NCBI RefSeq assembly: GCF_037042905.1
Contig: NC_087255.1
Coordinates: forward strand, 21,824,001 to 21,888,000
DNA from: Lytechinus pictus
Lineage: Eukaryota
Length of the DNA stretch: 64,000 nt
Direction of reading: 5' to 3'
In this document: one piece after another, positions 1,012 through 62,724 of the stretch
Numbering within the stretch: position 1 is the first letter of the stretch
Layout: each line of letters begins with the position of its first letter
The notes under the pieces: model-generated
Databases searched by the model: none
The model's input: only the letters and a program-made list of their open reading frames with translations
What the model was told of the DNA's origin: nothing
Made by a program: the position numbers and the translations under genes

Positions 1012-1198
1012 TGTTAAAGCTCTTGGATCTGTTCCTTGCTCGACCGGAGAATCCCCTTACATTACAACGCCCCCGTAGATGGACACATGAATACCCAATT
1101 TATAAACAGTCTCTGCGATAACGAAAACCCATTAACCTACACAAATGTATCTAATAACAAAATATCGAAACGAATGTTCAGCTCCGTTCAAGTAAGCG

Positions 1199-11033: not shown

Positions 11034-11108
11034 TGATAGATAGATAGATAGATAGAAAGATAGATAGATAAATAAATAGATAGATAGCTTAGAAAGATAG
11101 AGAGAGAG
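11034..11108. repeat. (GATA)n microsatellite next to an N-gap
   Basis: Seen directly. Confidence 0.9.
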
Positions 11109-15026: not shown

Positions 15027-16448
15027 TTAAAGGTCAAGTCCACCTCAGAAAAATGTTGATTTGAATCAATAGAGAAAAATCAGACAAGCACAATGCTGAA
15101 AATTTCATCAAAATCGGATGTAAAATAAGAAAGTTATGACATTTCTCAGTTTCGCTTATTTTTAACAAAATAGTTATATGAACGAGCCAGTTACATCCAA
15201 ATGAGAGAGTCGATGATGTCACTCACTCAATTTCAATTTTTACGAATTTGACGATTGGGACCTCCTTGCCTGAAGCACAAAATGTTAAAATAATGGAATT
15301 CCACGTGTTCAGGGAGGAATGAAACTTCATTTCACATGACAATGACGAGAAAATAAAAATATTTCATATTTCATATGATAAAATACAAAAGAAATAGTGA
15401 GTGAGTGATGTCATCAGTTCCTCATTTGCATACCGACCGAGATGTGCATATAACCATGGACCTATTACGAATGGACATTCAACGAGAGCATTTTATGACC
15501 ACCACCTGTTTCCAGCTGTCAAAATTGCTGTCTAACCCTTAACTTTCTCTTTACGCGGTTTTTACAATGACCGCCCGGTGTGATTGTTTACACAAGCTCC
15601 TTTCGCCCGATGATCGTCACCGATCGATCACTGGCCCTCTTTCGACCAAAGACGGTCATGTTGTAGCCCCGATTGCCAATAGGGAAAGTCCTTACATTAC
15701 CTAGAATGCAATGCGCTATTCATATCCGGTTTTTCAGTACATTATTTTAGGCTCTCTATAATGTGCGATTGTCGTCTGTCCATCAAAAAAAATCCCGTTA
15801 AATTTCATCAATCCTGTGGAATTTTATGCCCAAATGAAAATCAACTTCTGACCGAAGGTAAGCGCTACTATCGACATCGATACTGTCCGAAAAAGCTGAG
15901 ATTTTAACGTTTTTCCGCAGATTTTTTCGTCGAATTTCAACTGCTTTTTTGCCGTAGATATACGGATCTGCAAGGTGATGTCAATGCATTTCATTTCCGG
16001 TTGTTAGCGATGTACGTAAAAAATACGTTTATGCACGCCTGTTTTCTTGTTTCTGCTATCATTTTCATAGCGCTAACGTTCGCTGCTGTGCGTTGCTTTT
16101 GATAAAGTGAACGAACAACATCGCAATGGGTAGGAGCAGCGTACAATTGATTTCCGCTGTCAATCAGTGAGAGCATGTTTTACGACCGGCTTGATGGGTG
16201 TCAGCTGCCAGCGCTCTGTTTATAAAAGGATTAGCGGCGACGGTCTCTGTGTCAAAGGAGGGGATTCGTTGAATGTCCATTCGTAATAGGTCCATGATAT
16301 AACTGTTTTGTGAAATGAAGCGAAACTTTAAAATGCCATAACTTTCTTATTTTACATCCGATTTTGATGAAATTTTCAGTGTTATGCTTGTTGAATTTTT
16401 CTCTTTTTATTCAAATCAAGTTTTTGTTGGGGTGGACTTGTCCTTTAA
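15027..16448. mobile_element. Kolobok-like MITE interrupted by a nested element
   Basis: TTAA|AGGTCAAGTCCACC...GGTGGACTTGTCCT|TTAA. Confidence 0.85.
15455..16296. mobile_element. Non-autonomous P-element-like transposon (nested)
   Basis: Perfect 31-bp TIR CATGGACCTATTACGAATGGACATTCAACGA; 7-bp TSD ATATAAC at 15448-15454 and 16297-16303. Confidence 0.85.
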
Positions 16449-16690
16449 AAACCCCCAAATAAACAAAAAATTAATTCCATACAGATACATGTATAGTATA
16501 GGCCAATACTGGTACTAGTTTTTTGTTTTCTAAATATTATTGCTAACATGTTATATGTAACTTGTTACACTAAAACATACACCTTATACAAGAACAAACA
16601 TATACAGATAATATATAGGGTAAGCAATAACAAGAATTTTATAAACAAATAATGGAAGTTCCAGACAAGAAACTGTCATAAGGAGCAGTA

Positions 16691-16730
16691 TCAAAATTTA
16701 GTGTTTTCTCCGTTGTCAAAGCCTTCATTA
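16691..16730 (-). CDS. Terminal coding exon with stop; PDZ-type C-terminus
   Basis: Strong acceptor tctttattttctattcacag|, phase 2; (D)NEGFDNGENTKF-TGA. Confidence 0.7.
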
Positions 16731-19700
16731 CTGTGAATAGAAAATAAAGAGAGGGAGAAAATAGATGAGTAATTTAATTGAAGAATGAAACAAATGCTAG
16801 TATACATTTGGTTGAACTCCTCCTCCTCTAATTCTTCTTTCACTGAGTCTTCTCCTTCTGTCCATCAATCCACCTTCTTACTTGTTATTTTTCTTCCTCT
16901 GTCTTCTCCTTTCTCACTACTCTTCTTTTCATCCTTTTCCTTTCTTCTTCTTCCCTTCCCTCCCTCTCCATCTTTCTTCCTTCCCCTTTCCTCCTCCTTA
17001 CTTACCATTGTTCTCCCTTCTCCTCCCTCCTCCTTCTGCCTCCTCCTCCAGCTCCTCATCCTCTGCCTCCTCCACCAACTCCTCATCCTCTGCCTCCTCC
17101 TCCTCCACCACCTCCTCCATCTCTGCCTCCTCCTCCTCCACCACCTCCTCCTTCTTCTCCATCTCTGCCTCCTCTTTCCTCTCCACTCTCCTTCTTCCCC
17201 TTATTCACTATCTTTTTGCACCCCCCCACAAAACAACCACCATCTCAGAACTGGAAGCCACAGATTACACAAATGACAATGAAACATATCTTGTTTGACG
17301 GTTCGCATGGTGGAATAAAAAAAAATTGCTGAAGCGGTTTACAGTACACCATGTGTAAGATCCTGGACTTTACACATGGTATAGCGTAAACCACTTCCGC
17401 GAATGAAAGATATCTTACTCTTCGCCAGGAGTAGCAGCATCAGAATAAGTTGCATCAGAATAAGTTGCATTGGTAAAAGTTGATGTTGACGGCCTCTCAG
17501 ATTGCTTTAATGGCACTGCGTAGTCCGATTCTTCTTCATATTCTGAAATTCAAAAGATGAAAATATTGAGAAGCGTGTTGTGCATAAGTATTGAGAGTTA
17601 AGTTTGTTTCTTACTGAATAAACTAGAATGAAGTCAGTGGTGTCGAACAAATGTACCCCCCCTCCCAACATCTTACAAATAGGTCATCAGTTGATGTACT
17701 TCAAGGAGCAAGTGGACTAGACAACTCTGACACCTTTACCCAAAATGATCCCCACAAATATATAAGCAGAAAGCTTGGGGCCCTTACGAGTCTGATCAGC
17801 ACTGAGGAAAACATGTGCCTAATCACTGGGCTTTAGAAAAGTTCACAAAAGCGGTTGATATGAGTCCGCAAAATTTAAGGTTGGTAAAAGCTTCCAAATT
17901 ACAGTAGACAAAACAGAAGTGTATGGAACATCAAATCACCATCTTATGGTGTGGAGCATTGTGGCCCAGTGGATTAGTCTTCGGACTCTGAAACAGAGTG
18001 TCGTGGGTTAGAATCCCAGCCATGGCGTAATTTCCTTCGGCAAGAAATTTATCCACATTATGCTGCACTCGACCCAGGTGAGGTAAATGGGTACCTGGCA
18101 GGAATTTATTCCTTGAAATGCCACCGCGCTGTAAAAGACTGCGGGGACTAAAGCCAGGGAAATAATATCCAATCAAGCGCATACATGTAGGGACGCATTT
18201 GGCAGTGATATGCGCTATATAAGCATTTTGATTTTTTGATTTGATTTATTGTTTTCTTCTGCATCCATAACATTCGTATAATACATTTTTTATAACATAA
18301 TAAACATAATATGCTAGCATTTTTGGCATGAATCATAAATAAAGAGTATTAAAAAGATAATTTCAGACAAAAATGATTAACTATATGATATTCACAATTT
18401 GCAGGAGAAGGATTGTCATCATAAGCAGATTGCTTGAAAAAAATGACAATCCCAAACTTATACTAATTGAATTAATTAATACATTTATAAAGCAGAATGG
18501 GCATACATTTTCAAATACAAAACATGAATTCATGCAATATTATAGTATGAAGATGAAGATGATAAAGCTTAGGGTGACGGTGATATGATGATGTTGATGA
18601 TGATGATGATGATGATGATTATGAAGGCCATGGAGATGATGGTGGTCATGATGGTATAATTATTATCAACACAGTTTGATTTCCATTTTTTTTCTAAAAC
18701 ATGTGAGATTAGCATGAATTTAGTGAAATACTATGATCAGAAGGGTACAAGATGACTGTGACCTGAATTTAAAATGAGTCTGAGTTGAGTTTGCGATACT
18801 GCCAATCTGAGAAGAGTGTGGGCTTGGTGTGAAAGGGTTCATAAAAACACTACGTCTGAGATGAGATTGAGATGAATCTTAGCTACCGTAAGACAAATGT
18901 TGATTTGCATCAGATAAGTCCGAGACATGCTAAAGGGGAAAATCAGCCTGAAGAAAAGTTTGTTGTAAAAATAGCATAAAAATAATATTGGTGAAGATTT
19001 GAAAAAAATTCATTAAAGATTAAGAAAGTTATTAGAATTTTAAATCTGGGATTTATGGCATCATAAACAAGCTACCCCATAATGCATAAATTTCAATTTT
19101 TTGAATTGTACATGAGGACTTAATTTTGTTTTATTTTATGAACGGATGTGAAATGATTTGTCTATTGATATACTGAAAGTACAGTAAAAACCATTTTCGA
19201 TTTTCTAAGAAAATGACTTTTCATTAATTTTTCACCATGCATTAGATAAGAAAGCTGCTTGCATATGACGTCACAAATCAAATAATTAAAATTGTAATAA
19301 CTTTTTTATTCTTTGATGGATTTTTCTCAAACCTTCGGCAATATATTTTTTTAATTTTTCTACTATTTTTGCAATAAACTTTTTGCTAGGGCAAACTTCC
19401 CCTTTAAGTGTGAGATGAGTTTGCGATCTTGTACGACTGATAATAGTTTGTGAAATGGGTACGATAGAGAGTACATCTGATATAAGGTTTAGACTAATGT
19501 GAAATGATTCAGAGATTAAAAAAACATGACTGAGATGGGTCAAAGACGAGTGTGAGATAAGTTTGCAATACTATAAGTATGAGAAGTGTGTGAAGTAAGT
19601 GCGAAGTACGGAAGATATACAGGAAGTCCGAGAATAATTTTTGACATTGATAAGAGATACAGTACATATGAGAGATGATTCAGAGATTAAAAATTATGAC

Positions 19701-22700
19701 TGAGATGGGTCAAAGACGAGTGTGAGATAAGTTTGCAATACTATAAGTATGAGAAGTGTGTGAAGTAAGTGCGAAGTACGGAAGATATACAGGAAGTCCG
19801 AGAATAATTTTTGACATTGATAAGAGATACAGTACATATGAGAGATGATTCAGAGATTAAAAATTATGACTGAGATGGGTCTAAGATGAGTGTGAGATAA
19901 GTTTGCAATACTGTAAGTATGAGAAGTGTGTGAAGTAATTGTGAAGTAACGAAGATATACAGAAAGTCCAAGAATAATTTTTGACATTGGTAAGAGATAC
20001 AGTACATATGAGAGATGATTAAGAGATTAAAAATTATGACTGAGATGGGTCTAAGATGAGTGTGAGATAAGTTTGCAATACTGTAAGTATGAGAAGTGTG
20101 TGAAGTAAGGAAGATATACAGGAAGTCCAAGAGTAATTTTTGACAGTGATAAGAGATACAGTACACATGAGACAAGAATTAAATCTGAGATAACGTAAGA
20201 CTGAGAAGAGTCTGAGATGGGTATGCAACTGCTTTGCTCTTGATAATTCAATGACCTTTCTCAAAAGTCAGATCCTCTTCTTTCCCACAGGACTCCTGCA
20301 AGCAGCTTTTCATTACAAATCATCACAGTAAAAATAGACAAAACGGTTTATTTCCGATTCGTCTAATGCCAATTCGTCCACTCACCACATGGTCTACTTT
20401 CATTTAGTCTAATGCCATTCCGTCTAATAACCAGTTGGTCCAATAGCCATTTAGTCCATAATTAGACCAAATGTTAAATTGTGCAAAATGAATGAAAATG
20501 AAATGGATATTAGACCAATTGGTTATTAGACGAAATGGTCATAGACCAAATGGTGATTAGACGTAGTGATAATTGGACCAAATGGCTAATGGATCAAATG
20601 GTTGTTAGACGAAATGTTGATGGACAGAATGGCATTAGACTAAATGAAAGTAGACCATGTGGTGAGTGGATGAGTCGGCATACACGAATTGGCAATTTAC
20701 CAACAAAACAATGGGGATTGCAGGAAAGCTGCAATGAAAAGACACATCGTGCCTTTATAGTGGGATCCTGCTAAAAAACATACTGAGACTTTTGATATGG
20801 TACCTAACTAAAACTGAACATGAACTGAAACTCAATTATTAGTTCTCACTGTATGTTTGCAAATCCTGCGAGTTCATGAGACCATCACCAGTCTGCATTT
20901 TTCCTTTCTTCCGTCGATGTCTGGAGAAAGGAAGTAAAACAATAAAAGTGATATTACAAATTTACAACAAAAGAAAACAAATTAGCTGTAGCAGCAGAAG
21001 TAGCATCATTTCTGCCAATTGCCGTAGAAACACAAATTGCCAAAGGAATATCATTTTAAATTTACGTACAAAGAAACAAAGTTTACACCACACAAATCAG
21101 TGTTTTTTTTCTCAAATCCAGACATATTTTGATACAAGTATACCTTTATTTTCCCTTCTTCTAAATAAATCAGAAAATAAATCACATATTCCAGCCACAG
21201 TACCCTGGGGGTGTGACTTAAAGCCATGCTTAACCCTAAACAGGCCGGGGGGGTTGAATCAACCCCCCCTCAACATTTTCTGTGATCATTCCGCCGCGCG
21301 AGATTTTTTGACCGCGCCACTCGCAGAGTTTGCACTTTTAAGTCTCGCGCATCTTTTGAGACCAAATTTACGACACCCGGGTACGCGGTTCCGAAATTAC
21401 ACAACATTTTGTAAGTGCAAGTCAGACCAAAAATTGTTCCAAACGGTGATTTTGTGTACAAAGTCAAAGCAAATTGAGTTTTCTCATCTTATTCATAAAG
21501 ATATGAATATTTTTTACTTTAAACAGCTGAAATCAATTGATTTTAGCATAATTATGCTTCAAAAAGGTTGTGCAATAAATCTGGTGAAAAAAACAAAGAA
21601 ATACATAAGAAATTCATAAAACAATAAAATACATAAGAAATTGATTTCCAAACTGAAGTTTTTTTCAATTGCGATTGTTAAGAATGCTACAAAGAATATT
21701 TTTACCAAAAAGAAGCATTCTAGGAGCTTTATTTAGTGAATAAGAGCAAAAAGTATGATTTATGCATAAATTAGCATAATTAATTCATATAAAATAAAAT
21801 CTCATTATTTTGGAAAATTTTACCATACAGCCTTTTAGATTACATTGCACACTACCAGCGTGCAAATTTTTGCGGCGCTCGCGCAATCGGCGGCCGAGAT
21901 CTCAGGGGGGGGGGTTGAATCAACCCACCGGCCACAGAACAGCCAAAAAAGCCCGGCCTAGTTAGGGTTTAAGGCCGATGCTCACATGATTTTTAAATCC
22001 CATTGATTTAACGCGAGTCCCCTAAGCATGATTTCACCAATGATGTGATACGTTTTATACAGCAAACAACTACGAGTTTACGTGTGGCTTAAGGCTCTGT
22101 GAAAATTTCTGCGAAACAACCCCAGATACCTACTGCACAAAGCTCATGGGAAATCAGAAGTCAACAGGTTTACACTATTCCACATACCTGACCTCTATTC
22201 CCACCACTGTTGATACGACTAAAGCGAAGCTCCCAACCACTATCAATGAGATGGCCCAAGGTTCAAGCCCCTGTGTAGGGGGATCGGTCCTTGGTCCATC
22301 GGTCGTAGGTTGTGCACTGGGGGTGACGGTGTACTCAAACCCCTCCCCCATGATGTCCTTGATCGTGGTCTGCGAAGTCTCCTCCATGAGAGAGGTTTGT
22401 ACAATCTCGGGTTCGATGCCCATGATGATGTCCTCGTCAGCCATGCTGGGGTTGCCTACCCAGGTGGTGATATGGAGGTCGTTCTCAACGGCAACAGTGT
22501 CAAGGAATTCAACATCGCTGGCACTAAGATTAAAAGAAATAAAGACTGTATCTTCTGTTTGGATATGCAAAATTTGCTTATTCATACACACATTAAACAA
22601 ATCTTTCTCTTTATTTTTCAGTACAATAGCCATTAGGTGGTACACAGTTTACTCTATTTTGTATTGAGACCTTTGTTAAATATGCTTTAAATATACAATC

Positions 22701-55700: not shown

Positions 55701-58700
55701 GGCAAACTTGGTTGATGCACTAAGGAAGTCTTTAAATCCTGGCTAAAGCTTTGGTACAGGTAAAAAATGTGAATTACACTAGAGTATCAACTAACATGAA
55801 AATCTTTGAAGTGTCGGACCACTTATTTTCAACTGCCTATTCTCTGTGAAATTTCAATATTCAAATCTTGAATTACTAGCGCCCTCTCTCAAATATGTTT
55901 ATATCTTTCTTTAAGAAGGTTCTTTGAGCACTTATCTTACAAATGAAGTGATTGGTTATCAGAAAACTATAAAGATTATATCCTGCATTTTCAACCAATT
56001 TCATGGTCTGGAGCAGGTTATGAATTTATCAAAAAGAATTACCCACACAGATATTTTATATCCATCGAGCACCTGATTAAAATAAGTTTTCATGTAAAAT
56101 TGCAAAAATTAATTCTGTAAAGCGACCCACGGCATACACAACAAATGTTTATGATCAAATTCTTTGAAAAATCTCATTACTTAATTTATGCAAAAAATCA
56201 AAGGTTCGCTCTGATTCATTCTCTGCTAATTATTTTATTGACAGACTCTTTGTAGGATTCTGATTTAATGTACTGAAAAAAAATCTTACAAATTTTTTGT
56301 TTGCTTTTAAATTTTATCTGGATTTCTGTGTTTTCATATTTTTGGTTTTACATCATTTTTTCGATGGAAACCGTCAGCAACTTTATTCTGATCATAAACA
56401 AGCTGAAACTGATTGAGTTCAATCAGTAAAAATAGAAATAATGATATATATATATATATATATATGAATTCTAACTTAAAACACAATTTGGACTGTCTTT
56501 GTACACATATTCATGTTTTGGAGCAATTTGGTGTCATGACATGCATTTACAAAATGTGTAATTTGAGAAAGAGGTACCCTGGGGTTGCAGATTTGGTTTT
56601 AGAAGTTGTACAAAACTTGAATATAAAGATATGAGATGGCATGGCGCCAGCTTTTCGCGTTACAGACTTATTGCAAAAAATGTTGAGGGGTGGGTGGGGG
56701 GGGGGGGGGACTGAATAAAAAAAATGAACAAGTTCAGATCTTGTGAAGATAACACTAACCTGTAGATAAAGTGATTGGTTCTGTTCTACCAAGCTCAATA
56801 TCTTTGCTCGTCATAATAGTAACTGTGATGTCATAGGATGTGTTGGCATGGAGACCAGTGACAGCGCCGCTCATAGATTCACCACCATTCACATACACTG
56901 TGGATGATTACAAAAAGAGAAACAATGGGTGATTTCAAGTCTGGTGTTGGCCTTGGTGTTGGTGTTGAAATTTGGATTGCTTCCCCTGGCTCCAAAACTT
57001 ATTCATACTTTGTAAAACTGATCCAGGTCACATTATTAACACCTCAACAACTAGTGAGTTACTTTTCAGGACCATCTTCATTTTATGTTTGGTGTTATAC
57101 TCTTGTAAAAAATGACCTAACACCAACACCAGAAGGTCAACACCGTACTTGAAATCACCCATTAAGATGATTAGGTCATCATCAATAAGACTCTTGATAT
57201 TCATCAATCATGTATTAAATTAGACATTTAAATTTTAAAACACAGACCAAACTTTCAGATGCAGAAACTCATATATACACTGGTTTCATGCTACTATGGA
57301 TTTACAATTAAGATAACGGCATTACAGTTGATAGATAATAACATATTTACATGTATTCATTTATTCAATTTCTGAATTAGAGTAGCCCTATTAGTAGTTA
57401 AGTACAGTTCTACTGGGGACATTTGTGTGTACATGCACATAAATCTGTATGCACTTCATAATGTGTAATCACTAATTGACAAGGCTTGATATTTTGACAT
57501 TTCTAGGGCAAGGCTCCTTTTTAATAGGATGTATTTCTATATTACAGCACAAATGGGTAAAATAAAAATAAAAGGGGCATCAATTCCAATCAATAGGGTA
57601 TCCACCCTCATAGAATATGATTAATTTAAAGGTAAAAGACAAAAGTTGCAGCAAACAATTATTTCATGAGAAAGTCTTTTAAATCATGGTTAATCGTAAA
57701 AATATTATCATACATCTAGATCTGGTACATTAATGTAAACTTATCTTTGTAAAATCATGAAATCTTAGCTCAAAATCGATAATTCTGATATCTAGCATAG
57801 AAAAGCATATGTGGGACAATGTATCAATATTGCTTTGAAAAATACCTGACATTTGATGGAATTCGGTGCTTATTTCGCTCAATTCTCAGTGATTACCCAT
57901 TTTCTTCCAGAGTTATTTGGCACATATTTTTTTATTAATACATACAAACACTTTGGTGGTAATTTGATTGGATTATCTTCAAACTCATTTTGAGATCTTT
58001 ACCACAACTAGTATTTATCTTTAAGCCCTGATTGGAATCATCGAGATCACAAGCATTAAGTGTAAACAAAGGTCAAAATTAAAATCTTGGCCACATGCAG
58101 GAACATTATGACCATTATGATCGTAATCATAAAAACTATTATCATTATAACCATCATGCAGGAATCCACAATATATTTCCTGATTCCTGTTGTTTTGTCT
58201 AGATCAGAAGTTGGGGGATTGAAAGTTGTAAAAGTAGAAAGTGTGATCCCCACTAAAAAAAAAAATCCTGAAATTTAAAGCTTATTGATGTTTTCTGAAA
58301 AGAGATTCAATCCAAAGTACACGAAATACAGAGATCTTAAACAATGGAGCAAACCTGATGTAATCACATCACTGTCTTCTCCTGTTATTTCATAGTAGAT
58401 CTTGTATCCTACAGCATTGCATCCATTCTCTGGTAGGTCCCATGTGACGTCGATGGTATACATCCCTCCTGTTCCTCTTACATTCTCAACAACTTGAGAA
58501 TTAAGATCAAAATCTGAAAATATGATTTTAAAATGTTATCAGTTTCACCATCATCATCATCATCATCACTGTCACCATCAGCAACATCATCATCATCATC
58601 GTCATTATCTTCGTAATCTTCATCATCATCATCAACGCTATCATTGTCACCATCATCATCATCATCATTGTCATCATCATATTATCACTCCTATCATCCC

Positions 58701-61700
58701 CCTCCTCCTCATNNNNNNNNNNNNNNNNNNNNNNNNNNNNNNNNNNNNNNNNNNNNNNNNNNNNNNNNNNNNNNNNNNNNNNNNNNNNNNNNNNNNNNNN
58801 NNNNNNNNNNNNNNNNNNNNNNNNNNNNNNNNNNNNNNNNNNNNNNNNNNNNNNNNNNNNNNNNNNNNNNNNNNNNNNNNNNNNNNNNNNNNNNNNNNNN
58901 NNNNNNNNNNNNNNNNNNNNNNNNNNNNNNNNNNNNNNNNNNNNNNNNNNNNNNNNNNNNNNNNNNNNNNNNNNNNNNNNNNNNNNCCATTATCATCATC
59001 ATCAACAACAACCTCATCATCCCCCTCCCCCTCCTCATCATCCTCATCATCACCCTCCCCCTCCTCATCATCTTCATCATTATCCTCCCCCTCATTATCC
59101 TCATCATCACTAATTATCATCATAAAATAGAGCAGCTTTGCACCTGTAGGATACAGTTCACACAGATAGCTGAATTTTCCATCACAGGAAAGATTGATGA
59201 TGTCACCGCTTGGCTGAAGAGCAGCACAGGTAAGATCACCATCAGAGGGGTAATCTGGAGCCCAGAGAGTATCCTGGTAGCCGGTAGTGGTAGTACAGTC
59301 CACCCATCTCCATTCTCCAGCAACATGAAGGTCAGATAAACCTAGAAGAACAAGTAAGAGCTTTAGACCAAGCGATGTATTCTGGAGCCCATCAGCTATC
59401 CTGATAATTTGTAATGGTAGAACAATCCAACCATCTCCATTTTCTAGGATCACCTAAATGCCAATAATCTTCCAATTCTGTGGTTCATGAAGAATCAAAC
59501 TCCTCTCTTGGGTCGAGTGCAGCCAATGTGGATATATTTCTTGCTGAAGGAAATTAACGCTTGGAGTTGGATTCAAACTGATGCTCCTCTGATTAAAAAG
59601 CCAGATACAGTGGATCGCATTACCGAACACTTTTCATAAATTCAATCGTATCAAACACAATTTACAACTATACCGGGTGTGAGAAAGTAAAATGGAATTA
59701 TTTAATCAGAGGTAGGTTTAGCAATTACTTTCTTTCCCAGGGGCAAAGCCCCCGAGAGAAATTTGTTACATTACCAGACCAACCGAGGATGAATACTTCC
59801 CACTATGCTTTTGAAAGAAACGGCCGGTACATTTGTTTTATATCCCTTCCGTATCAAAGTTTGAACGAAAAATCATTGTTATCTAGTCCTAATTAACCCA
59901 TCTTCATGATCTGGAAAGAAACCTAGATTGGCTAAGCTCTAATACAGGGTATATGCAAAATTGGCTTATCATCTAAGCTGGCCAATTCCCACTATGCTTT
60001 CGAAAGAAACGTCTGGTATATTTGTTTTATATCCCTTCTATATAAGTTTGAATGATAAAATATTTGTTATCTATTCCTGATTGACCCATCTCCATGATCT
60101 GGAAAAAATCTAGATTGGCTAAGCTCTAATTTATGCAAAATTGGCTTATCATCTAAGCTGGCCAGTTCCTGGATAGACTGTGCGTGGCTGCTACCAGCCC
60201 AACCCAGCTCACTCATGGTGGTGTGGTGTTGAGTGGCAGCTGTGAGCGCTTATACAATTTCACTTACCGGTTGTGAAGGTTTTGAACGATTCCTGCAGAA
60301 CTAAACTTGAGCAACCCAAATCTTTTGATGATCAAATGATGGCCATCATAAATTTTATTTCAGCATGCAGATTCATTATAAACAAGCAAGACGCAATTTC
60401 ACATTGACATTTGAAATTTATGATTCAGCTATTGCGCTGCACTCAACGGAACCTGATGAAGCGTCTGAGCCAACGCATCACTATACTTACCCGGTGGACA
60501 CAGCCCGTTGTGTGCTGTTTCTGATTGCATTGTTTCCAGTCGGACGCAAAATAGAAAAAAAAATACTATTCTATTCTGACATCACAAACTATTTTGATCT
60601 CCAATGAATTTAATTTTTCTGGTAAAATTATTATAAGTCACATGAAGGGCTCTCGACCAATCCAATAGCAAAAAATATTTAGTAATGGATATAGTATTTT
60701 TCTATATAAGCCGGTCGGTTTTATGCAATACTCAGCATGGATCAAATTTGAGATTTCACTTACCAATCCACCATGTCATATTTGGGTTTATCTCCACACT
60801 TCTGTTGACAAGAAAAGCAAGTTCCTCAGGATCGTTGATGACAGCTAGATCAGAGTCTTCTACATTGTCACATGTCCTTCGACCAGTCGGCCAAGTAGAA
60901 CCATAGTCTAGTATCCTGAATCGGTAACAGTGACCATTGGGGCCTTCCTCGTAATTGTCTGGACATTCATCTGTGGAATGGAAACAAACATGCATGTCAT
61001 GGTTACTGGAGGATCTAATCAAAGGCAAACATGAAATCTGTTACATGAAAATTATGTTGATGAAAATGAGGAATATGTTGAGGCTAGCTCAAATTAAATT
61101 TCCAAAGGTTACTTTTTTTTCAAATTATTAATCAAAATTGAATTCTTGGAATGATAACACCAATATTTTATAATCCTTTTCATCAAAATGGCAAATTATT
61201 TAAAGCTTGATCATAGCTTACCTAGAAATGAAACTATGACTTAGAGTATGATGTGAATATCAAAAAAATACCAAGCTACATAACAATAAAGATAATACCC
61301 AAGCTGAAAAAAAAATGGTAAAACCGCTACATGTATTTGGCAAGTTAAGCACGATGATCTAACAAGCCTGTGACCATAATGGCGTTATGAGGTGAGGCAC
61401 AACTGATATTATGCTGAAGTCTTACCAAAGTTGACATTGCTTGGCAATGTGACTTCCATGGTACCTTTCACCGACAATTTCCAGTGCATCAAGGAACTTT
61501 GTTAAAGCTTTGAATACCCCTTTTACTCAAATTTTGATATTTAGTCTTAACAAATCAAGTATTATCTACACAAGATATGAACATGCTTATAATTGTTTTT
61601 ACATTTACCTGCTATACATGTACAAACAATTGTTCTACTTCTCAAAATTAAAGTGTCTAATACCACATACATGTAGGTTAAACCCATTTGGCCACCTACA

Positions 61701-62724
61701 ATTTGGTCCACAACAATTGGTCTAATACCCAGATGGTCCAATTTCTATTCATCGAACCATATAGAATAAGTGATATCAGACCAAGTGTATATACTGTAGA
61801 TGACATGGGTATAGCCTTAACCCTAATTTAACTGGGCTATTTCAGACCAAGATAAATGGAGGGAGTGGTCAATTTGAACCCCCTTCAGATCCCAGCCGCT
61901 GATTGCTTGATCGCCGCAAAAATTTGCAGGCGCATAGAGAACATGTAAACAAGAGTATACAGTAAAATTTTCAAAAAATTTATTGTTTTAATTATTTCAT
62001 TAATTAATAATGCAAATAAGAGTATGAAATTTGCCCTAAATTTGTTGTTTTTGTTCATGTTTCTGCCTTTAACTCACTTAATATAGCTAGTAGAATGCAA
62101 ATTTTTTGTGAAAATATCAATTTATATATTTCTAACATATATCTACCAAAAATTGCAAAACATAAATAATTTCCTAAGTATTTCATTGTTTATTTAATTC
62201 TTATGTACATGTATTTCTTTGTTTTTTCAAATCTTTGTTTTTATCGTTTTTTCAATTCACTTCGTCGCGACCCTTTGTGATCACAAATAGCATAAAGTAA
62301 ATCCATTTAAACCGACAAAAGTAGAAATAATCATACAAGTACATTTCTGATTTTTGGTTGAAAAACACAATTTGCATTGACTTGGTACACGGAATCACAT
62401 TTTGGAGAAATTTTGGGTCTGACATGCGTTTACAGAATGTTCTGTAATTTCGGAACTGCGTACCAAATGCATCACAAATTTAGTCTCAAAAGACTTAAAA
62501 GTAAAAAGTCAGCGAGCGGCATAGCAACCCCCACCCTTCCCAAGTAAGGGTTAATGGATATAAAAGAAAATGGTGAATGGGCATACCTGTAGAGAGAATG
62601 ACTGGTTCAGTTCTAGCAAGCTCAATATCTTTGCTTGTCACAATAGCAACTGTGATGTTATAGGAAGTATTTGCACGGAGGTCAGAGACGGTCCCGTTGA
62701 CAGAGTCACCACCATTGACATATA
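16691..62724 (-). CDS. Multi-exon gene (34 coding exons in window, 5' truncated): (CTLD-FN3)n-CUBx3-SEA-like-TM type I membrane receptor/adhesion protein
   Basis: Manual splicing of GT/GC-AG-bounded exons gives one open frame of 5510 nt with matching phases at all 33 junctions. Domain motifs: CTLD WIG/WRW/Cys pattern, FN3 W...Y-x-I-x-Y...L-x-P-N-T-x-Y, CUB SP-x-Y/WP...W...F-x-SD...GF, hydrophobic TM followed by RHRRKK. Confidence 0.9.
16816..17200. repeat. Pyrimidine-rich (CCT/TCT) low-complexity tract in the last intron
   Basis: Nearly pure C/T; source of spurious poly-S/L/E ORFs. Confidence 0.9.
17419..17542 (-). CDS. Exon: cytoplasmic tail 2 (tyrosine motifs)
   Basis: tttcag|..|gtaaga, 124 nt, phase 1-2; (K)YEEESDYAVPLKQSERPSTSTFTNATYSDATYSDAATPGE. 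Confidence 0.75.
17951..18225 (+). mobile_element. tRNA-derived SINE family 1; copies at about 32025-32279(-), 51222-51475(+), 59505-59600(-)
   Basis: A box TGGCCCAGTGG, B box GGTTAGAATCCC, shared core ccacattntgctgcactcnacccaggtgaggtnaatgggtacc. Confidence 0.8.
18930..19407. mobile_element. Kolobok-like MITE family A, opposite orientation
   Basis: AGGGGAA...TTCCCCT|TTAA; internal sequence is the reverse complement of 4127-4623. Confidence 0.75.
19504..20172. repeat. Tandem repeat, ~170-bp unit x ~4
   Basis: atgatt..gagattaaaaa recurs at 19504, 19675, 19845 and 20015. Confidence 0.92.
20344..20702. mobile_element. Foldback element built from ~15-bp TAGACCAA subrepeats; copies at about 30098-30474 and 51855-52241
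   Basis: ttggtctaat repeats on the left, attagaccaa repeats on the right, ends ggtaaattg / caatttacc. Confidence 0.65.
20850..20920 (-). CDS. Exon: cytoplasmic tail 1 (basic stop-transfer)
   Basis: ctttctccag|..|gtgaga, 71 nt, phase 2-1; (R)HRRKKGKMQTGDGLMNSQDLQTY. Confidence 0.8.
21230..21972. mobile_element. piggyBac-like MITE
   Basis: TTAA|CCCTAAACAGGCCGGG...CCCGGCCTAGTTAGGG|tTTAA; family copies at 35373-36129, 56040-56710 and 61817-62554. Confidence 0.8.
22188..22523 (-). CDS. Exon: SEA-like C-part, T/P-rich stalk, transmembrane helix
   Basis: 336 nt, phase 2-2; ASDVEFLDTVAVENDLHITTWVGNP...PTTDGPRTDPPTQGLEPWAISLIVVGSFALVVSTVVGIEV. Confidence 0.9.
23048..23184 (-). CDS. Exon: SEA-like domain with Cys pair and RRRR furin site
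   Basis: 137 nt, phase 0-2; FTHDRQEDLATGIATSMTDYCRDKSDTCEALQRRRRDASILELTF. Confidence 0.85.
23826..23896 (-). CDS. Exon: linker and start of juxtamembrane SEA-like domain
   Basis: 71 nt, phase 1-0, atacag|..|gtgagt; EPPTPYNEIADSVIFIVQNEPIGW. Confidence 0.82.
24524..24926. mobile_element. Kolobok-like MITE family C; copies at about 33082-33474 and 57626-58024
   Basis: TTAA|AGAGAAATTCCAGT...ACTAGAATTTACCT|TTAA; shared catgagaaagtct core. Confidence 0.78.
24972..25420. mobile_element. MITE with apparent AT target duplication
   Basis: TIR ccagttcgtagtt / aactacgaactgg; splits the host tandem unit GGGATAAT^TGCATTGA. Confidence 0.7.
26487..26671 (-). CDS. Exon: CUB3 C-part
   Basis: 185 nt, phase 2-1; HDFLVLGTGKTINEEVIVILTGDTLPAPVQSASYRMWLQFKSDESFSSTGFSLEYSSIDNP. 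Confidence 0.92.
27173..27335 (-). CDS. Exon: CUB3 N-part
   Basis: 163 nt, phase 1-2; ASCGSQELLEGSGSVMSPNYPQPYPDNQECTWFIRLPSMNNLVRVEFNAFSLEE. Confidence 0.93.
27449..27650 (-). mobile_element. tRNA-derived SINE family 2; second copy at about 43545-43848(+)
   Basis: A box TAGCTCAGTCGG, B box GGTTCAATTCCC, shared tggtgcgctagtgccctttggtaaggcatt and cggagaggaccttaagccgtc. Confidence 0.8.
28279..28540 (-). CDS. Exon: CUB2 C-part
   Basis: 262 nt, phase 0-1; DMTWTLIGPKTGRVRMNSIEGVLESGYDTLTVG...FWVRFKADETVANKGFTLYWESFDDQ. Confidence 0.9.
29153..29244 (-). CDS. Exon: CUB2 N-part
   Basis: 92 nt, phase 1-0; GPGEPTREYDEITEEGTLTSPGWPDNHPNFV. Confidence 0.87.
30491..30725 (-). CDS. Exon: CUB1 C-part
   Basis: 235 nt, phase 0-1; ILNFDTRAGVDFVVIGSG...LSPGQHMWISFKTSEATLDYAGFLMNVTMVTQ. 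Confidence 0.9.
31655..31782 (-). CDS. Exon: CUB1 N-part
   Basis: 128 nt, phase 1-0; ECGRIIVDGDGMIMSADYPNGYYGPETCEWLISAPVNQFVLLQ. Confidence 0.9.
32842..32997 (-). CDS. Exon: FN3 C-half (unit 5)
   Basis: 156 nt; TQFHVVYGGNLSSLTVPNLSPSMTYEFHVAALIPDRLELPRIGPANATTFS. Confidence 0.9.
33622..34794. mobile_element. Helentron-associated (HINE/DINE-1-like) element with internal ~163-bp tandem array
   Basis: AACAAG start in an A-run, subterminal IR gtctcgcctgcat / atgcaggcgagac, terminal hairpin 34769-34794, (GCC)n, about 5.5 internal repeats. Confidence 0.7.
35148..35297 (-). CDS. Exon: FN3 N-half (unit 5)
   Basis: 150 nt; DFTSADMNVRDVMASPLSNTEIHVSWVLSNITCDVYGYKIYYGLQGEPLD. Confidence 0.9.
35373..36129. 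mobile_element. piggyBac-like MITE (same family)
   Basis: TTAA..CCCT...AGGG|TTAA; shares gcgcatcttttgagaccaaattt with the 21230 copy. Confidence 0.78.
36763..36963 (-). CDS. Exon: CTLD C-half (unit 5), GC donor
   Basis: 201 nt; GFSDFSVESDWRWVTCDAPTDWQNTIWETGYPRNGLHDCGALSSTSGQVIDDICDKPNYYICEITPK; donor AAG|gcaagt. Confidence 0.9.
37170..37865. repeat. Tandem repeat, ~164-bp unit x ~4
   Basis: ttacagatacac recurs at 37202, 37367, 37531 and 37693. Confidence 0.92.
38170..38376 (-). CDS. Exon: CTLD N-half (unit 5)
   Basis: 207 nt; GPCPAYYESGPNGGCYRFVTSEYGSIWSSGRSGCAVVEDSDLVIIDDQAEFEFIVNRTEYFYPIKDWWIG (missed by the ORF track). Confidence 0.93.
39278..39418 (-). CDS. Exon: FN3 C-half (unit 4)
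   Basis: 141 nt; ALVYGGGVDSYDLTMLQPSTRYSITVAGERIDAELPQVGPVYVTTPE. Confidence 0.9.
40082..40240 (-). CDS. Exon: FN3 N-half (unit 4)
   Basis: 159 nt; DFNIGDENVFNVNATAIAWDTVRVTWNVSEYNCDVVLYNIYYLDTFLGGKPEW. Confidence 0.9.
40814..41017 (-). CDS. Exon: CTLD C-half (unit 4)
   Basis: 204 nt; GYSDLSVEGDWRWITCASSNDWQKSLWAEGYPQNGLDDCGVFDPDTMTVYDQVCDTMNINYICEVTPK. Confidence 0.92.
41630..41754 (-). CDS. Exon: CTLD N-half part b (unit 4)
   Basis: 125 nt, phase 2-1; FYCSEAGDNFEHDLMIIDDEWELEYITNRTKEFNDSRDWRIG. Confidence 0.88.
43284..43377 (-). CDS. Exon: CTLD N-half part a (unit 4)
   Basis: 94 nt, phase 1-2; DPCPTGYEEAANGRCYWFQDFGRYGNDWDNTR. Confidence 0.88.
43932..44066 (-). CDS. Exon: FN3 C-half (unit 3)
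   Basis: 135 nt; KIIYGGDSSGARIQGLLPNTTVNISVAVLISAGELDRVGPVMGQS. Confidence 0.9.
45143..45493 (-). mobile_element. tRNA-derived SINE family 3; partial copy at about 29310-29497
   Basis: B box GTTCGAATCCC, ctccccagggagtgga core, (TTA)n tail. Confidence 0.7.
45542..45589 (-). ncRNA. Minimal type I hammerhead ribozyme motif, sense to the host pre-mRNA
   Basis: Minus strand gctagt-CTGAAGA-a-gcctgc(agaaatga)gtaggt-GAAA-gc-TC-acaagc. Confidence 0.68.
45792..45838 (+). ncRNA. Minimal type I hammerhead ribozyme motif (Penelope-type)
   Basis: attagt-CTGAAGA-a-gcctgc(agaacaa)gcagac-GAAA-gc-TC-attgat; palindromic AGCT stem III. Confidence 0.7.
45983..46135 (-). CDS. Exon: FN3 N-half (unit 3)
   Basis: 153 nt; GFDPTELKVENLETSGASYGVEISWTVPENACDVYGYKIYYQEMENDREES. 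Confidence 0.9.
47024..47221 (-). CDS. Exon: CTLD C-half (unit 3)
   Basis: 198 nt; GYHDTSVEGEWRWVDCTESDNWQMNLWAPGSPSNEMADCGSLTSSGEIEAQVCDVRFNFVCEVSPK. Confidence 0.92.
47837..48040 (-). CDS. Exon: CTLD N-half (unit 3)
   Basis: 204 nt; EPCPDGYSLAPNGRCYRFVEGSPSFWHYTRETCWMRKDSDLAIINDQEELDYIMQQINATGDTNNWWIG. Confidence 0.93.
48486..50109. mobile_element. DNA-transposon remnant with a nested LINE fragment
   Basis: TIR cagtcagtccgcaagccc / gggcttgcggactgactg, flanking ATTG direct repeat, internal IR ttttagatgggtcagcagccagctttt. Confidence 0.7.
49370..49935 (-). mobile_element. CR1/L2-type LINE 3' end
   Basis: Minus frame HSYNTRHSNDYHLPKSRTVFSSKTVFFTGPKLWNSL...NRFK, followed by 3' UTR and (AAAAT)n tail. 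Confidence 0.75.
50234..50574 (+). mobile_element. Interspersed repeat with inverted end, probably Penelope-like; relatives at 54190-54522 and 17331-17400
   Basis: Shared ctcagctttccactcctggtttacagtcctaaggactacactc; IR cggaagaggtttacggtac / gtaccgtaaacctcttccg. Confidence 0.5.
51512..51649 (-). CDS. Exon: FN3 C-half (unit 2)
   Basis: 138 nt; FVYGGDTSSAVVRGMLPNTTYDVTIAAHTSKDIELSPVGPITATT. Confidence 0.92.
52823..52978 (-). CDS. Exon: FN3 N-half (unit 2)
   Basis: 156 nt; GFRDEDANPHDLNATATTYGLEVTWTVSMTSCDVIGYRIYYYLTGDISTRAS. Confidence 0.9.
53225..53294 (-). pseudogene. Relic copy of the 3' end of a CTLD C-half exon
   Basis: Reads IVDLVFDTPLNYLCEIAPK versus IVDLVCDTPLSYLCEIAPK in exon 53949-54146. 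Confidence 0.8.
53949..54146 (-). CDS. Exon: CTLD C-half (unit 2)
   Basis: 198 nt; GYSDQSVEGDWRWIDCSESSRWQDALWVPGHPGNGRLDCAALQPDGQIVDLVCDTPLSYLCEIAPK. Confidence 0.93.
54689..54845 (+). mobile_element. Penelope-like terminal repeat remnant with inverted end
   Basis: IR gtaaaggaaataatctcttgtctcacgatgc / gcatcgtgagacaacagattatttccttttac enclosing TATAAAA and a hammerhead core. Confidence 0.6.
54761..54803 (+). ncRNA. Minimal type I hammerhead ribozyme motif (Penelope-type)
   Basis: attgc-CTGACGA-agaatagcaattgcagtc-GAAA-cg-TC-gcaat; perfect 5-bp stem I, palindromic ACGT stem III, imperfect stem II. Confidence 0.62.
54848..55000. repeat. (AAT)n microsatellite
   Basis: Seen directly. Confidence 0.9.
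54990..55435 (-). mobile_element. Degenerate L2-type LINE 3' end
   Basis: GERSFVHSSSKLWNS motif; tail runs into (TTA)n. Confidence 0.5.
55457..55663 (-). CDS. Exon: CTLD N-half (unit 2)
   Basis: 207 nt; VPCPQNYEEGPNGHCYRFRILEYGSWWPTGRRTCDNEPDSDLVIIDDPMELDFLINRTAEIDPNIMWWIG. Confidence 0.93.
56040..56710. mobile_element. Degenerate piggyBac-like MITE, reverse orientation
   Basis: aaaatgttgagggg end and internal similarity to the reverse complement of the 21230 copy; left boundary uncertain. Confidence 0.55.
56760..56897 (-). CDS. Exon: FN3 C-half (unit 1)
   Basis: 138 nt; VYVNGGESMSGAVTGLHANTSYDITVTIMTSKDIELGRTEPITLST. Confidence 0.92.
58355..58513 (-). CDS. Exon: FN3 N-half (unit 1)
   Basis: 159 nt; DFDLNSQVVENVRGTGGMYTIDVTWDLPENGCNAVGYKIYYEITGEDSDVITS. 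Confidence 0.9.
58548..59122. repeat. (CAT/CCT)n microsatellite spanning N-gap 58713-58986
   Basis: Seen directly; other gaps at 5062-5291, 10834-11028 and 39717-39878. Confidence 0.9.
59144..59341 (-). CDS. Exon: CTLD C-half (unit 1)
   Basis: 198 nt, phase 1-1; GLSDLHVAGEWRWVDCTTTTGYQDTLWAPDYPSDGDLTCAALQPSGDIINLSCDGKFSYLCELYPT. Confidence 0.92.
59380..59453 (-). pseudogene. Degenerate partial duplicate of the CTLD C-half exon with its own AG acceptor and in-frame stop
   Basis: catttag|GT GAT CCT... reads GDPRKWRWLDCSTITNYQDS*WAPEY versus the real exon AGEWRWVDCTTTTGYQDTLWAPDY. Confidence 0.8.
59797..60166. repeat. Direct duplication, ~189-bp unit x2
   Basis: ttcccactatgcttt..gaaagaaacg...ggcttatcatctaagctggcca occurs twice. 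Confidence 0.85.
60764..60970 (-). CDS. Exon: CTLD N-half (unit 1)
   Basis: 207 nt, phase 1-1; DECPDNYEEGPNGHCYRFRILDYGSTWPTGRRTCDNVEDSDLAVINDPEELAFLVNRSVEINPNMTWWIG. Confidence 0.93.
61817..62554. mobile_element. piggyBac-like MITE, reverse orientation
   Basis: TTAA|CCCT...AGGG|TTAA; reverse complement of the 35373 copy. Confidence 0.78.
62587..62724 (-). CDS. Exon: FN3 C-terminal half (unit 0)
   Basis: ccgcag|..|gtatgc, 138 nt, phase 1-1; YVNGGDSVNGTVSDLRANTSYNITVAIVTSKDIELARTEPVILST. Confidence 0.9.

What the first reader, a model, noticed from the sequence alone, without database searches (positions are those of the whole stretch)
16691..62724. Giant receptor with an unfamiliar (C-type lectin-FN3)n-CUB3-SEA-TM architecture
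Seen: 34 phase-consistent exons give at least 5.5 strictly alternating CTLD/FN3 pairs, three CUBs, a cleavable juxtamembrane domain, one TM helix and a signalling-type tail. Knowledge: the mannose receptor family has tandem CTLDs with FN2 rather than FN3; sea urchin EBR1 uses CUB/TSP1 repeats; REJ proteins put CTLDs on a polycystin scaffold. None has this alternation. Inference: an undescribed lineage-specific recognition, adhesion or endocytic receptor (immune, gamete or larval surface).
Basis: partly seen in the sequence, partly recalled or inferred. Interest (0 to 1): 0.85.

Follow-up and report, generated by a model that had tools for sequence, protein, structure and literature searches.

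The report
Echinoderm giant lectin-FN3-CUB membrane receptor
This is a real, transcribed sea-urchin gene for a giant single-pass membrane protein built of strictly alternating C-type-lectin-like and fibronectin-III domains, three CUB domains and a membrane-adjacent SEA-like domain; the design is shared by echinoderm classes, has no characterised member, and was not found outside the phylum.

Summary
On the minus strand, 34 exons (62724 to 16691) splice into one open frame of 1835 codons. It is 96.7% identical to Lytechinus pictus LOC129271967. The order is half an FN3, five CTLD-FN3 pairs, three CUBs, a juxtamembrane domain, one TM helix and a 78-residue tail.

Both N gaps lie in introns, and orthologues read straight across them. 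Spliced RNA contigs from three runs join the last FN3 exon to the first CUB exon at the predicted sites, so both halves belong to one transcript.

The gene continues about 35 kb beyond the window with six more pairs, giving about 11 in all.

Predicted orthologues with the same order occur in sea urchins, sea stars and a brittle star, with a variant in a feather star. All are named "uncharacterized", and no paper was found.

- The "SEA" domain has no Pfam SEA match and no G/SVVV site. Its predicted fold is closest to cadherin membrane-adjacent domains. The basic RRRR site is not conserved.
- The lectin domains lack the Ca2+/sugar motif.

Function is inferred only: a multivalent protein-binding receptor coupled through an FxNxxY tail motif to endocytic or cytoskeletal adaptors.

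This scan has not noted the gene on other DNA.

The parts
62587..62724 (-). Exon 1 in window: second half of the FN3 of the unit whose first three exons lie beyond 64000
   Evidence: fn3 profile positions 50-80
60764..60970 (-). Unit 1 CTLD, first exon (phase 1-1)
   Evidence: Lectin_C positions 3-45
59144..59341 (-). Unit 1 CTLD, second exon
   Evidence: Lectin_C positions 44-106
58713..58986 (.). Assembly gap inside the intron between unit 1 CTLD and FN3 exons
   Evidence: orthologue continuous across the junction
58355..58513 (-). Unit 1 FN3, first exon
56760..56897 (-). Unit 1 FN3, second exon
55457..55663 (-). Unit 2 CTLD, first exon
53949..54146 (-). Unit 2 CTLD, second exon
52823..52978 (-). 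Unit 2 FN3, first exon
51512..51649 (-). Unit 2 FN3, second exon
47837..48040 (-). Unit 3 CTLD, first exon
47024..47221 (-). Unit 3 CTLD, second exon
45983..46135 (-). Unit 3 FN3, first exon
43932..44066 (-). Unit 3 FN3, second exon
43284..43377 (-). Unit 4 CTLD, first exon part a (this unit has an extra phase-2 intron)
41630..41754 (-). Unit 4 CTLD, first exon part b
40814..41017 (-). Unit 4 CTLD, second exon
40082..40240 (-). Unit 4 FN3, first exon
39717..39878 (.). Assembly gap inside the intron between the two FN3 exons of unit 4
   Evidence: Diadema orthologue continuous across the junction
39278..39418 (-). Unit 4 FN3, second exon. It is full length here. The L. pictus model uses an inner acceptor at 39319, and the S. 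purpuratus model lacks the exon
38170..38376 (-). Unit 5 CTLD, first exon
36763..36963 (-). Unit 5 CTLD, second exon (GC donor)
35148..35297 (-). Unit 5 FN3, first exon
32842..32997 (-). Unit 5 FN3, second exon, joined in RNA to CUB1
   Evidence: joint 32842|31782
31655..31782 (-). CUB1, first exon
30491..30725 (-). CUB1, second exon
29153..29244 (-). CUB2, first exon
28279..28540 (-). CUB2, second exon
27173..27335 (-). CUB3, first exon
26487..26671 (-). CUB3, second exon
23826..23896 (-). Juxtamembrane domain, exon 1 (first beta strand)
23048..23184 (-). Juxtamembrane domain, exon 2 (helix 1 and the loop with RRRR at 23077-23088)
22188..22523 (-). Juxtamembrane domain, exon 3, then a Pro/Thr linker and the TM helix (about 22190-22258)
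20850..20920 (-). Cytoplasmic tail, exon 1 (basic stop-transfer stretch)
17419..17542 (-). Cytoplasmic tail, exon 2, with the integrin-beta-like / FxNxxY motif at 17460-17495
16691..16730 (-). Last coding exon, with stop codon at 16691-16693

Best explanation
What it is (shown). This is one expressed gene of a Lytechinus-like sea urchin, the orthologue of L. pictus LOC129271967 and S. purpuratus LOC577309. It encodes a giant type I membrane glycoprotein. About 11 CTLD-FN3 pairs (5.5 in the window) are followed by three cubilin-like CUB domains, a membrane-adjacent ferredoxin-like (SEA-like/MAD-type) domain, one TM helix and a 78-residue tail.

How it most likely works (inferred). Each CTLD and its FN3 form one fixed two-domain module, probably stapled by a disulfide between the extra Cys in the CTLD WxWxDC motif and the single Cys in the FN3 B-C loop. 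The modules would then form a long, stiff stalk. The CTLDs cannot bind sugar through the classical Ca2+ site, so ligands are probably proteins or matrix components. They would be captured by CTLD surfaces and by the Ca2+-type acidic sites of CUB2 and CUB3. The tail carries STSTFTNATY, an FxNxxY motif. This resembles the internalisation signals I recall from the LDL and mannose receptors, and it nearly matches the distal NxxY region of this genome's own integrin beta. It would recruit PTB or FERM adaptors. My preferred reading is a multivalent capture and uptake (scavenger or endocytic) receptor.

The anatomy is about 95% certain and this mechanism about 40%.
For: Gene and transcript:
- Open 1835-codon spliced frame, 96.7% identical to P0013.
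- RNA joints at five predicted splice sites, including FN3 to CUB.
- Colinear orthologue models in echinoids, asteroids and an ophiuroid, with a variant in a crinoid.

Module:
- Eight invariant Cys in all 39 units examined, seven in the CTLD and one in the FN3.
- AlphaFold2 model of one unit has pLDDT 93.5 and pTM 0.85.
- Separate-chain test gave weak support: score 0.34 against a best control of 0.05. That mark was reached by 51 of 78 solved complexes and 2 of 108 mismatched pairs. Runs agreed in at least 92% of contacts, and partner pLDDT was at least 81.

Ligand side:
- The EPN and WND positions are not conserved; only the Pro is kept.
- The closest solved CTLDs belong to the endocytic mannose-receptor family: FcRY, MRC1, PLA2R and Endo180, E 1e-14 to 1e-12.
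- The closest solved CUBs are cubilin CUB5-8, E 5e-44. The aligned acidic LEE..DF..SD positions are kept in CUB3 and are present in CUB2.

Tail:
- RPSTSTFTNATY matches KPSTSVFKNPTY of the genome's own integrin beta at 8 of 12 positions. Only 1 of 5000 shuffles of the tail reached that.
- Sea-star tails keep RPTSF...WNPAF.
Against: - No expression site, ligand or binding partner is known.
- The complex test was only 'weak support'.
- The tail motif fits endocytic PTB adaptors and kindlin-type FERM proteins equally well. The juxtamembrane domain is most like those of force-bearing cadherins, which favours the adhesion rival.
- The Pfam integrin-tail model does not hit the tail.
- The tails of the Diadema and S. 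purpuratus models are truncated or different, probably because of model errors.
- The 5' end and signal peptide were not found. It is not shown for this genome that the six upstream units belong to the same transcript.
Confidence: 0.5

Rival explanations
1. A force-bearing adhesion receptor. The stiff (CTLD-FN3)n rod binds matrix or a neighbouring cell. The membrane-adjacent domain acts as in protocadherin-15, cadherin-23 and CELSR. The integrin-beta-like NxxY tail binds kindlin- or talin-type FERM proteins and links to actin.
For: - The juxtamembrane model matches PCDH15 MAD12 (Z 11.3, rmsd 2.4 A over 107 residues), CELSR1 (Z 10.0) and CDH23 MAD28 (Z 9.0), well above true SEA domains.
- The tail matches the genome's own integrin beta distal motif at 8 of 12 positions.
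- The Cys pattern and pTM 0.85 suggest rigid modules.
Against: - No membrane-proximal NPxY (talin site) and no Pfam integrin-tail hit.
- The same motif fits endocytic signals.
- The nearest sequence relatives of the CTLDs and CUBs are endocytic receptors.
- No expression or localisation data.
Confidence: 0.3
2. A classical Ca2+-dependent carbohydrate pattern-recognition receptor of innate immunity.
For: Many CTLDs on one chain would give high avidity. Sea urchins have large immune lectin repertoires (general knowledge). The CTLDs are long-form and closest to mannose-receptor-family and DC-SIGN-type domains.
Against: Across 39 units the Glu and Asn of EPN and the Trp and Asn of WND are not conserved. 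Orthologous units are kept one-to-one between urchin genera at 70-90% identity, which does not look like a fast-diversifying immune family.
Confidence: 0.1
3. A gamete or egg-coat recognition protein comparable to EBR1 or suREJ.
For: It is a giant repetitive ectodomain containing CUB and CTLD domains, the domain types used by sea-urchin fertilisation proteins (general knowledge).
Against: No TSP1, ADAMTS, REJ, PKD or GPS domains were found. The architecture is conserved across echinoderm classes with moderate-to-high identity, unlike fast-evolving gamete recognition proteins. RNA contigs carrying the exons were seen in runs from six studies of two species labels, but their tissues are unknown.
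Confidence: 0.07
4. An artefact: two adjacent genes, or a decayed repeat array, read as one.
For: The repeats make mis-joining easy. Orthologue models differ in unit number and in one FN3 exon.
Against: There is no stop codon in 1835 spliced codons. Spliced RNA contigs cross FN3 to CUB and continue about 2.8 kb upstream and more than 1 kb downstream. Models in about ten species are colinear.
Confidence: 0.03

Closest known systems
Mannose receptor family (MRC1, PLA2R1, LY75/DEC-205, MRC2/Endo180, avian FcRY)
   Same: Type I membrane proteins with many CTLDs on one chain, most of which do not bind sugar. They have a short tail with a tyrosine-based signal (FxNxxY type, from my knowledge of MRC1). 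They are the best sequence matches of these CTLDs among solved structures.
   Different: That family has an N-terminal ricin-type domain and an FN2 domain, then directly tandem CTLDs. Here there is no ricin or FN2 hit. Every CTLD is followed by an FN3. Three CUBs and a SEA-like domain sit next to the membrane.
Cubilin and other Ca2+-binding CUB proteins (neuropilins, PCPE-1, MASPs)
   Same: CUB2-CUB3 match cubilin CUB5-8 at E 5e-44, with the acidic positions aligned. Tandem CUBs serve as ligand-binding units.
   Different: Cubilin has 27 CUBs, EGF repeats and no TM helix. Here there are only three CUBs, placed between a lectin/FN3 stalk and the membrane.
Membrane-adjacent domains (MAD) of protocadherin-15, cadherin-23 and CELSR, and the wider SEA-like group (ACE2/collectrin neck, IA-2, dystroglycan, Notch HD, Nup54)
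   Same: A beta-alpha-beta-beta-alpha-beta domain directly before the TM helix. Z is 9-11 to MADs, 7.5 to IA-2 and 5-6 to MUC16 SEA. Foldseek's top hits are the ACE2 neck plus TM.
   Different: There is no detectable sequence similarity (8-15% identity) and no Pfam hit. There is an extra loop with a basic RRRR site in urchins and the crinoid only.
Classical SEA domain (Pfam PF01390; mucins, enteropeptidase, agrin)
   Same: The same general alpha/beta sandwich and the same position next to the membrane.
   Different: No PF01390 hit. No G/SVVV motif at the beta2-beta3 turn. Structural scores are lower than to MADs.
Integrin beta cytoplasmic tail (distal NxxY, kindlin site)
   Same: A 12-residue stretch is 8/12 identical to the genome's own integrin beta tail.
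   Different: No HDRREF membrane-proximal region and no proximal NPxY. The ectodomain is unrelated.
Sea urchin EBR1 and suREJ proteins
   Same: Large repetitive echinoderm surface proteins that use CUB or CTLD domains.
   Different: No TSP1, ADAMTS, REJ, PKD or GPS domains here. The domain order and membrane anchorage differ.

Membership tests
C-type lectin-like domain (Pfam PF00059) | Significant match to the Lectin_C profile, with the WIGL motif and the canonical Cys framework | tested here: met
   The two exons of a CTLD hit profile positions 3-45 and 44-106. Orthologues score E 1e-79 to 1e-128 with 7-10 copies. Six framework Cys are near-invariant or invariant.
Ca2+-dependent carbohydrate-recognition domain (functional C-type lectin) | EPN or QPD triplet plus WND motif forming Ca2+ site 2 | tested here: not met
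   In 39 units the first position is E, Y, S, H or Q and the third is S, G, A, R or D. The W of WND is I, V or L, and the N is variable.
Fibronectin type III (PF00041) | Match to the fn3 profile | tested here: met
   Second-half exons hit positions 50-82. Orthologues score E 1e-38 to 1e-61 with 6-9 copies. The AF2 unit model shows seven strands after the CTLD.
CUB (PF00431), Ca2+-binding subtype | Match to the CUB profile; Glu/Asp/Asp acidic triad | tested here: met
   CUB exons score E 1e-5 to 1e-11, with three copies in orthologues. The acidic positions align with cubilin in CUB3 and are present in CUB2. CUB1 is partly substituted. Ca2+ binding itself was not tested.
SEA domain (PF01390) | Match to the SEA profile | tested here: not met
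   There were no Pfam SEA hits at E<=1 on the juxtamembrane regions of three orthologues.
SEA domain (PF01390) | G/SVVV autoproteolysis motif at the beta2-beta3 turn | tested here: not met
   The turn reads AVEND in urchins and VDSD in sea stars.
SEA-like / membrane-adjacent domain (MAD) fold group | Beta-alpha-beta-beta-alpha-beta sandwich immediately before the TM helix, with structural similarity to MAD12/MAD28 | tested here: met
   The AF2 model has pLDDT 79 with the right element order. Z is 11.3 to PCDH15 MAD12, 10.0 to CELSR1 and 9.0 to CDH23 MAD28. This is a predicted structure only.
Mannose receptor family | N-terminal ricin-type domain and FN2 domain followed by directly tandem CTLDs | tested here: not met
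   No ricin or FN2 hits in any orthologue. The sea-star protein starts with a CTLD at residue 34, and CTLDs always alternate with FN3.
EBR1 / REJ-type sea urchin gamete proteins | TSP1/ADAMTS modules (EBR1), or REJ, PKD and GPS modules with multiple TM helices (REJ) | tested here: not met
   None of these families is among the Pfam hits. There is a single TM helix.
Furin-processed receptor | Conserved, exposed R-x-K/R-R site; cleavage shown | tested here: inconclusive
   RRRR is present here and in S. purpuratus, and RRKRR in the crinoid. L. pictus has only RRR, Diadema only RR, and sea stars have none. The loop has pLDDT 63-69. Cleavage cannot be tested here.
Integrin beta tail (PF08725) | Match to the Integrin_b_cyt profile with proximal NPxY and distal NxxY | tested here: not met
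   No Pfam hit on the tail. Only the distal 12-mer is shared.

The most novel reading that the evidence does not exclude
The CTLD-FN3 pair is a single disulfide-stapled composite module found only in echinoderms. Eleven of them form a rigid rod tens of nanometres long, anchored through a cadherin-type membrane-adjacent domain and an integrin-like kindlin-binding tail. That would be a previously unrecognised class of force-bearing adhesion or mechanosensing receptor that arose in the echinoderm stem lineage.
Probability: 0.2. Interest if true: 0.7.

Novelty: new variant of a known kind. Interest (0 to 1): 0.45.

Why it matters
This is a phylum-wide giant surface receptor that nobody has studied. 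Its domain order is kept in sea urchins, sea stars and a brittle star, with a variant in a feather star, so it probably does something basic in echinoderm cell biology. Candidates are uptake of extracellular material and cell-matrix attachment.

It also offers a clean case of how new receptors are made. A four-exon, phase-1 CTLD-FN3 block is copied in tandem, and the number of blocks varies between lineages.

The invariant odd cysteine pair predicts an inter-domain staple. That would be a new way of building stiff extracellular stalks from two common domains.

All of this can be tested in Lytechinus, where gene knock-out is available.

Tried and rejected
- Pfam on the juxtamembrane regions of three orthologues gave no SEA hit or any other significant hit.
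- PF28033 is precomputed on most orthologues, but it is not in the local Pfam copy, so its identity is unknown.
- phmmer of the tail exon against PDB sequences gave nothing.
- The search for homologous proteins with the unit alignment, limited to proteins of 128-408 aa, gave nothing at E<=1e-10. That is uninformative about large proteins.
- Literature searches by LOC and XP identifiers and by domain-word combinations found no relevant paper. 'The echinoderm adhesome' (PMC3565218) is not held.
- Raw RNA reads of run X21 barely cover the exons (depth under 1), so they give no strand or level information.
- The signal-peptide exon upstream of extended coordinate 98638 could not be identified.
- A natural 'unpaired' CTLD or FN3 lacking its extra Cys was sought as a covariation test, but none exists. 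The Cys are invariant, even in a crinoid FN3 that follows a CUB.
- Complex prediction of the CTLD against its FN3 gave weak support only: 0.34 against a best control of 0.05. That mark was reached by 51 of 78 solved complexes and 2 of 108 mismatched pairs.
- Rfam found no family at gathering score anywhere in the window.

Full report
WHAT IS THERE

The window is AT-rich (about 36% G+C) and has four N runs. It is G000:C11:21824001-21888000 of an 812-Mb assembly.

On the minus strand, stop-free stretches recur about every 5.5 kb with obvious CTLD and FN3 signatures. These are followed by CUB-like stretches, a hydrophobic helix and a basic stop-transfer sequence.

Pfam on single open stretches hit matching half-domains:
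- Lectin_C positions 3-45 and 44-106.
- fn3 positions 50-82.
- CUB positions 1-50 and 56-110.

Each domain is therefore split over two exons.

GENE MODEL

A phmmer search with the TM-proximal exon found a 1614-aa sea-star protein. A word search seeded with its longer isoform found relatives in about ten echinoderm species.

The L. pictus protein LOC129271967 (P0013) aligns colinearly with the window. I scored every donor/acceptor pair against it and corrected three boundaries by eye.

The result is 34 exons, from 62724 to 16691:
- All have AG/GT sites except one GC donor.
- All exons of the repeated units are phase 1-1.
- The spliced frame is open for 1835 codons, ends at the TGA at 16691-16693, and is 96.7% identical to P0013 residues 434-2235.

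The only structural difference from P0013 is exon 39418-39278. It is full length here, the L. pictus model uses an inner acceptor, and the S. purpuratus model omits it.

THE N GAPS

Gap 58713-58986 lies in the intron between exons 59341-59144 and 58513-58355. Gap 39717-39878 lies in the intron between exons 40240-40082 and 39418-39278.

Reading frame across them is set by splicing, not by the gap length. The L. pictus protein is continuous across the first junction. The Diadema protein is continuous across the second.

TRANSCRIPTION

RNA-type contigs of three runs, from two species labels, laid on 27100-33099 give joints at 32842|31782, 31655|30725, 30491|29244, 29153|28540 and 28279|27335. 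All have CT..AC ends on the plus strand, which is GT..AG on the minus strand.

One 3323-nt contig runs CUB1b, CUB1a and the last FN3 exon, then continues about 2.8 kb upstream. Others continue more than 1 kb downstream of CUB3a.

They are one transcript.

The contigs differ from the window at 2-5% of exon positions. I attribute this to polymorphism or a sister species.

EXTENT BEYOND THE WINDOW

On the same strand, six more CTLD-FN3 units follow upstream, up to extended coordinate 98638 (C11:21922638).

The S. purpuratus protein LOC577309 (2916 aa) aligns colinearly over them and on into the window. Single units are gained or lost between the two lineages.

The gene thus has about 11 pairs and would encode roughly 3200 residues. 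The signal-peptide exon was not found.

Paralogous clusters lie on C1 (with a juxtamembrane-domain hit), C6 and C9.

CONSERVATION

HMMs built from the window's own domains give these orders:
- (CTLD-FN3)n-CUB3-JM in Lytechinus, Strongylocentrotus, Diadema and Amphiura.
- (CTLD-FN3)n-CUB2-JM in Acanthaster and Patiria.
- No CUB in the Asterias model.
- A variant order in the crinoid Anneissia.

Pfam copy numbers agree. All of these proteins are named 'uncharacterized protein'.

Among 2.3 million AlphaFold DB fold clusters, only one entry matched both domains of the unit together (TM 0.80, rmsd 2.6 A over 220 residues). It is an unnamed 259-aa protein whose accession series I recall as sea cucumber; I did not verify that. 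Every other hit aligned the CTLD alone or had rmsd above 10 A.

No paper was found by gene identifiers or by domain words.

THE CTLD-FN3 UNIT

In 39 units from eight species, eight Cys columns are invariant or nearly so. Six form the long-form CTLD framework. One extra Cys replaces the Gly of the usual WxWxDG motif. One more lies in the FN3 B-C loop.

Seven plus one makes an even number only if the two domains are bridged.

An AlphaFold2 model of one unit, built with a 34-row alignment, has pLDDT 93.5 and pTM 0.85. That indicates a fixed mutual orientation.

Folding the two domains as separate chains gave weak support: score 0.34 against a best control of 0.05. That mark was reached by 51 of 78 solved complexes and 2 of 108 mismatches. 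Runs agreed in at least 92% of contacts, and partner pLDDT was at least 81.

The disulfide itself is an inference.

The Ca2+/sugar residues (EPN, WND) are not conserved; only the cis-Pro is kept. The nearest solved CTLDs are those of the mannose-receptor family.

THE CUBS

CUB2-3 match cubilin CUB5-8 at E 5e-44. Neuropilins, PCPE-1 and MASPs follow. The acidic positions that bind Ca2+ in those proteins (from my knowledge of the cubilin and C1s/MASP structures) are aligned in CUB3 and present in CUB2.

THE JUXTAMEMBRANE DOMAIN

There was no Pfam hit.

An AlphaFold2 model from 12 sequences has pLDDT 79 and the order beta-alpha-beta-beta-alpha-beta, followed by a linker and the TM helix.

An all-against-representatives structural search gave:
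- PCDH15 MAD12: Z 11.3.
- CELSR1: Z 10.0.
- Nup54: Z 9.3.
- CDH23 MAD28: Z 9.0.
- IA-2: Z 7.5.
- Dystroglycan: Z 6.1.
- MUC16 SEA: Z 6.0.
- Notch2 HD: Z 5.1.

Foldseek put the ACE2 collectrin-like neck plus TM first.

This is the divergent SEA-like group, nearest to the cadherin membrane-adjacent domains. It is not a classical SEA domain.

The beta2-beta3 turn has no G/SVVV. A basic site sits in the low-confidence loop before beta2. It reads RRRR here and in S. purpuratus, RRR in L. pictus, RR in Diadema and RRKRR in the crinoid. Sea stars have nothing there. Cleavage is possible in some lineages but is not a family trait.

This agrees with, and limits, the scan's separate note s1-311780.

THE TAIL

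The tail is 78 residues long and has five Tyr.

The stretch RPSTSTFTNATY is 8/12 identical to KPSTSVFKNPTY at the end of this genome's own integrin beta tail. Only 1 of 5000 shuffles of the tail reached 8. Sea-star tails keep RPTSF...WNPAF.

From general knowledge, FxNxxY is the coated-pit signal of the LDL and mannose receptors. The TST-NxxY region of integrin beta is the kindlin site.

So the tail probably recruits a PTB or FERM adaptor. Which one is open.

READING

The anatomy is secure. For function I prefer a multivalent, non-lectin capture and uptake receptor. The reasons are its mannose-receptor-like CTLDs, cubilin-like CUBs and the FxNxxY motif.

A force-bearing adhesion receptor comes next, supported by the MAD-type domain, the integrin-like tail and the rigid modules.

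Classical sugar-binding immunity and gamete recognition are less likely.

NOVELTY

All the domains are known, and the proteins already sit in databases as unnamed predictions. What is new is the description of the architecture:
- Strict CTLD-FN3 pairing with an invariant odd Cys pair.
- A CUB triplet.
- A MAD-type anchor.
- An integrin-like motif.
- Its phylum-wide conservation.

I class it as a new variant of a known kind, the multi-CTLD type I receptors. It is of solid but not exceptional interest.

Noticed in passing
beyond the window: G000:C11:21888001-21922638 (extended window coordinates 64001-98638), minus strand: Six further CTLD-FN3 units of the same gene, colinear with S. purpuratus LOC577309. 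No signal-peptide exon was recognised upstream of 98638.
   Followed up: partly
G000:C1:14486495-14534034; C6:8142962-8151493; C9:26467662-26470071: Paralogous clusters of CTLD/FN3 exons. The C1 cluster also has a juxtamembrane-domain hit (E 2e-7), so at least one more gene of this architecture exists in the genome.
   Followed up: no
window 39278-39418: This second FN3 exon of unit 4 is full length here. It is truncated by an inner acceptor (39319) in the L. pictus model and missing from the S. purpuratus model. It may be alternatively spliced, or the models may be wrong.
   Followed up: partly
window 27300-27699, 29300-29499, 29700-29899, 30100-30499, 31900-32299: Intronic stretches with summed contig word depths of about 10^3 to 3x10^4 in RNA-type runs of both species labels, with many loose ends. 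At 27500-27699, raw reads with first mates on the + strand reach depth about 1450. These look like multi-copy transcribed repeats (transposons), not parts of this gene.
   Followed up: no
window 19512-20270: A tandem repeat of about 170 bp in the intron between the first two tail exons. It shows up as the same peptide-like open frames repeated at least four times.
   Followed up: no
window 37436-37945 and 33988-34270: Further short tandem duplications inside introns: two or three copies of about 160 bp.
   Followed up: no
window 16868-17244 and 58480-59110: Purine-rich GA/GAN microsatellite-like tracts in introns. The second flanks the assembly gap at 58713-58986, which may explain why the assembly broke there.
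   Followed up: no
window 45513-45868: Another note of this scan (s1-311665) proposes hammerhead ribozyme motifs here. Rfam at gathering thresholds found no family anywhere in the window. I did not run the more permissive search.
   Followed up: partly
P0014 (Amphiura) residues 145-708 and P0012 (Asterias) residues 318-881: Several consecutive FN3 domains are identical or nearly so within one protein. This points to very recent unit duplication or to assembly or model collapse in those species.
   Followed up: no
window 1-16600: No convincing coding exons were seen downstream of the gene. It holds only short or low-complexity open frames and two more N gaps (5062-5291, 10834-11028).
   Followed up: partly
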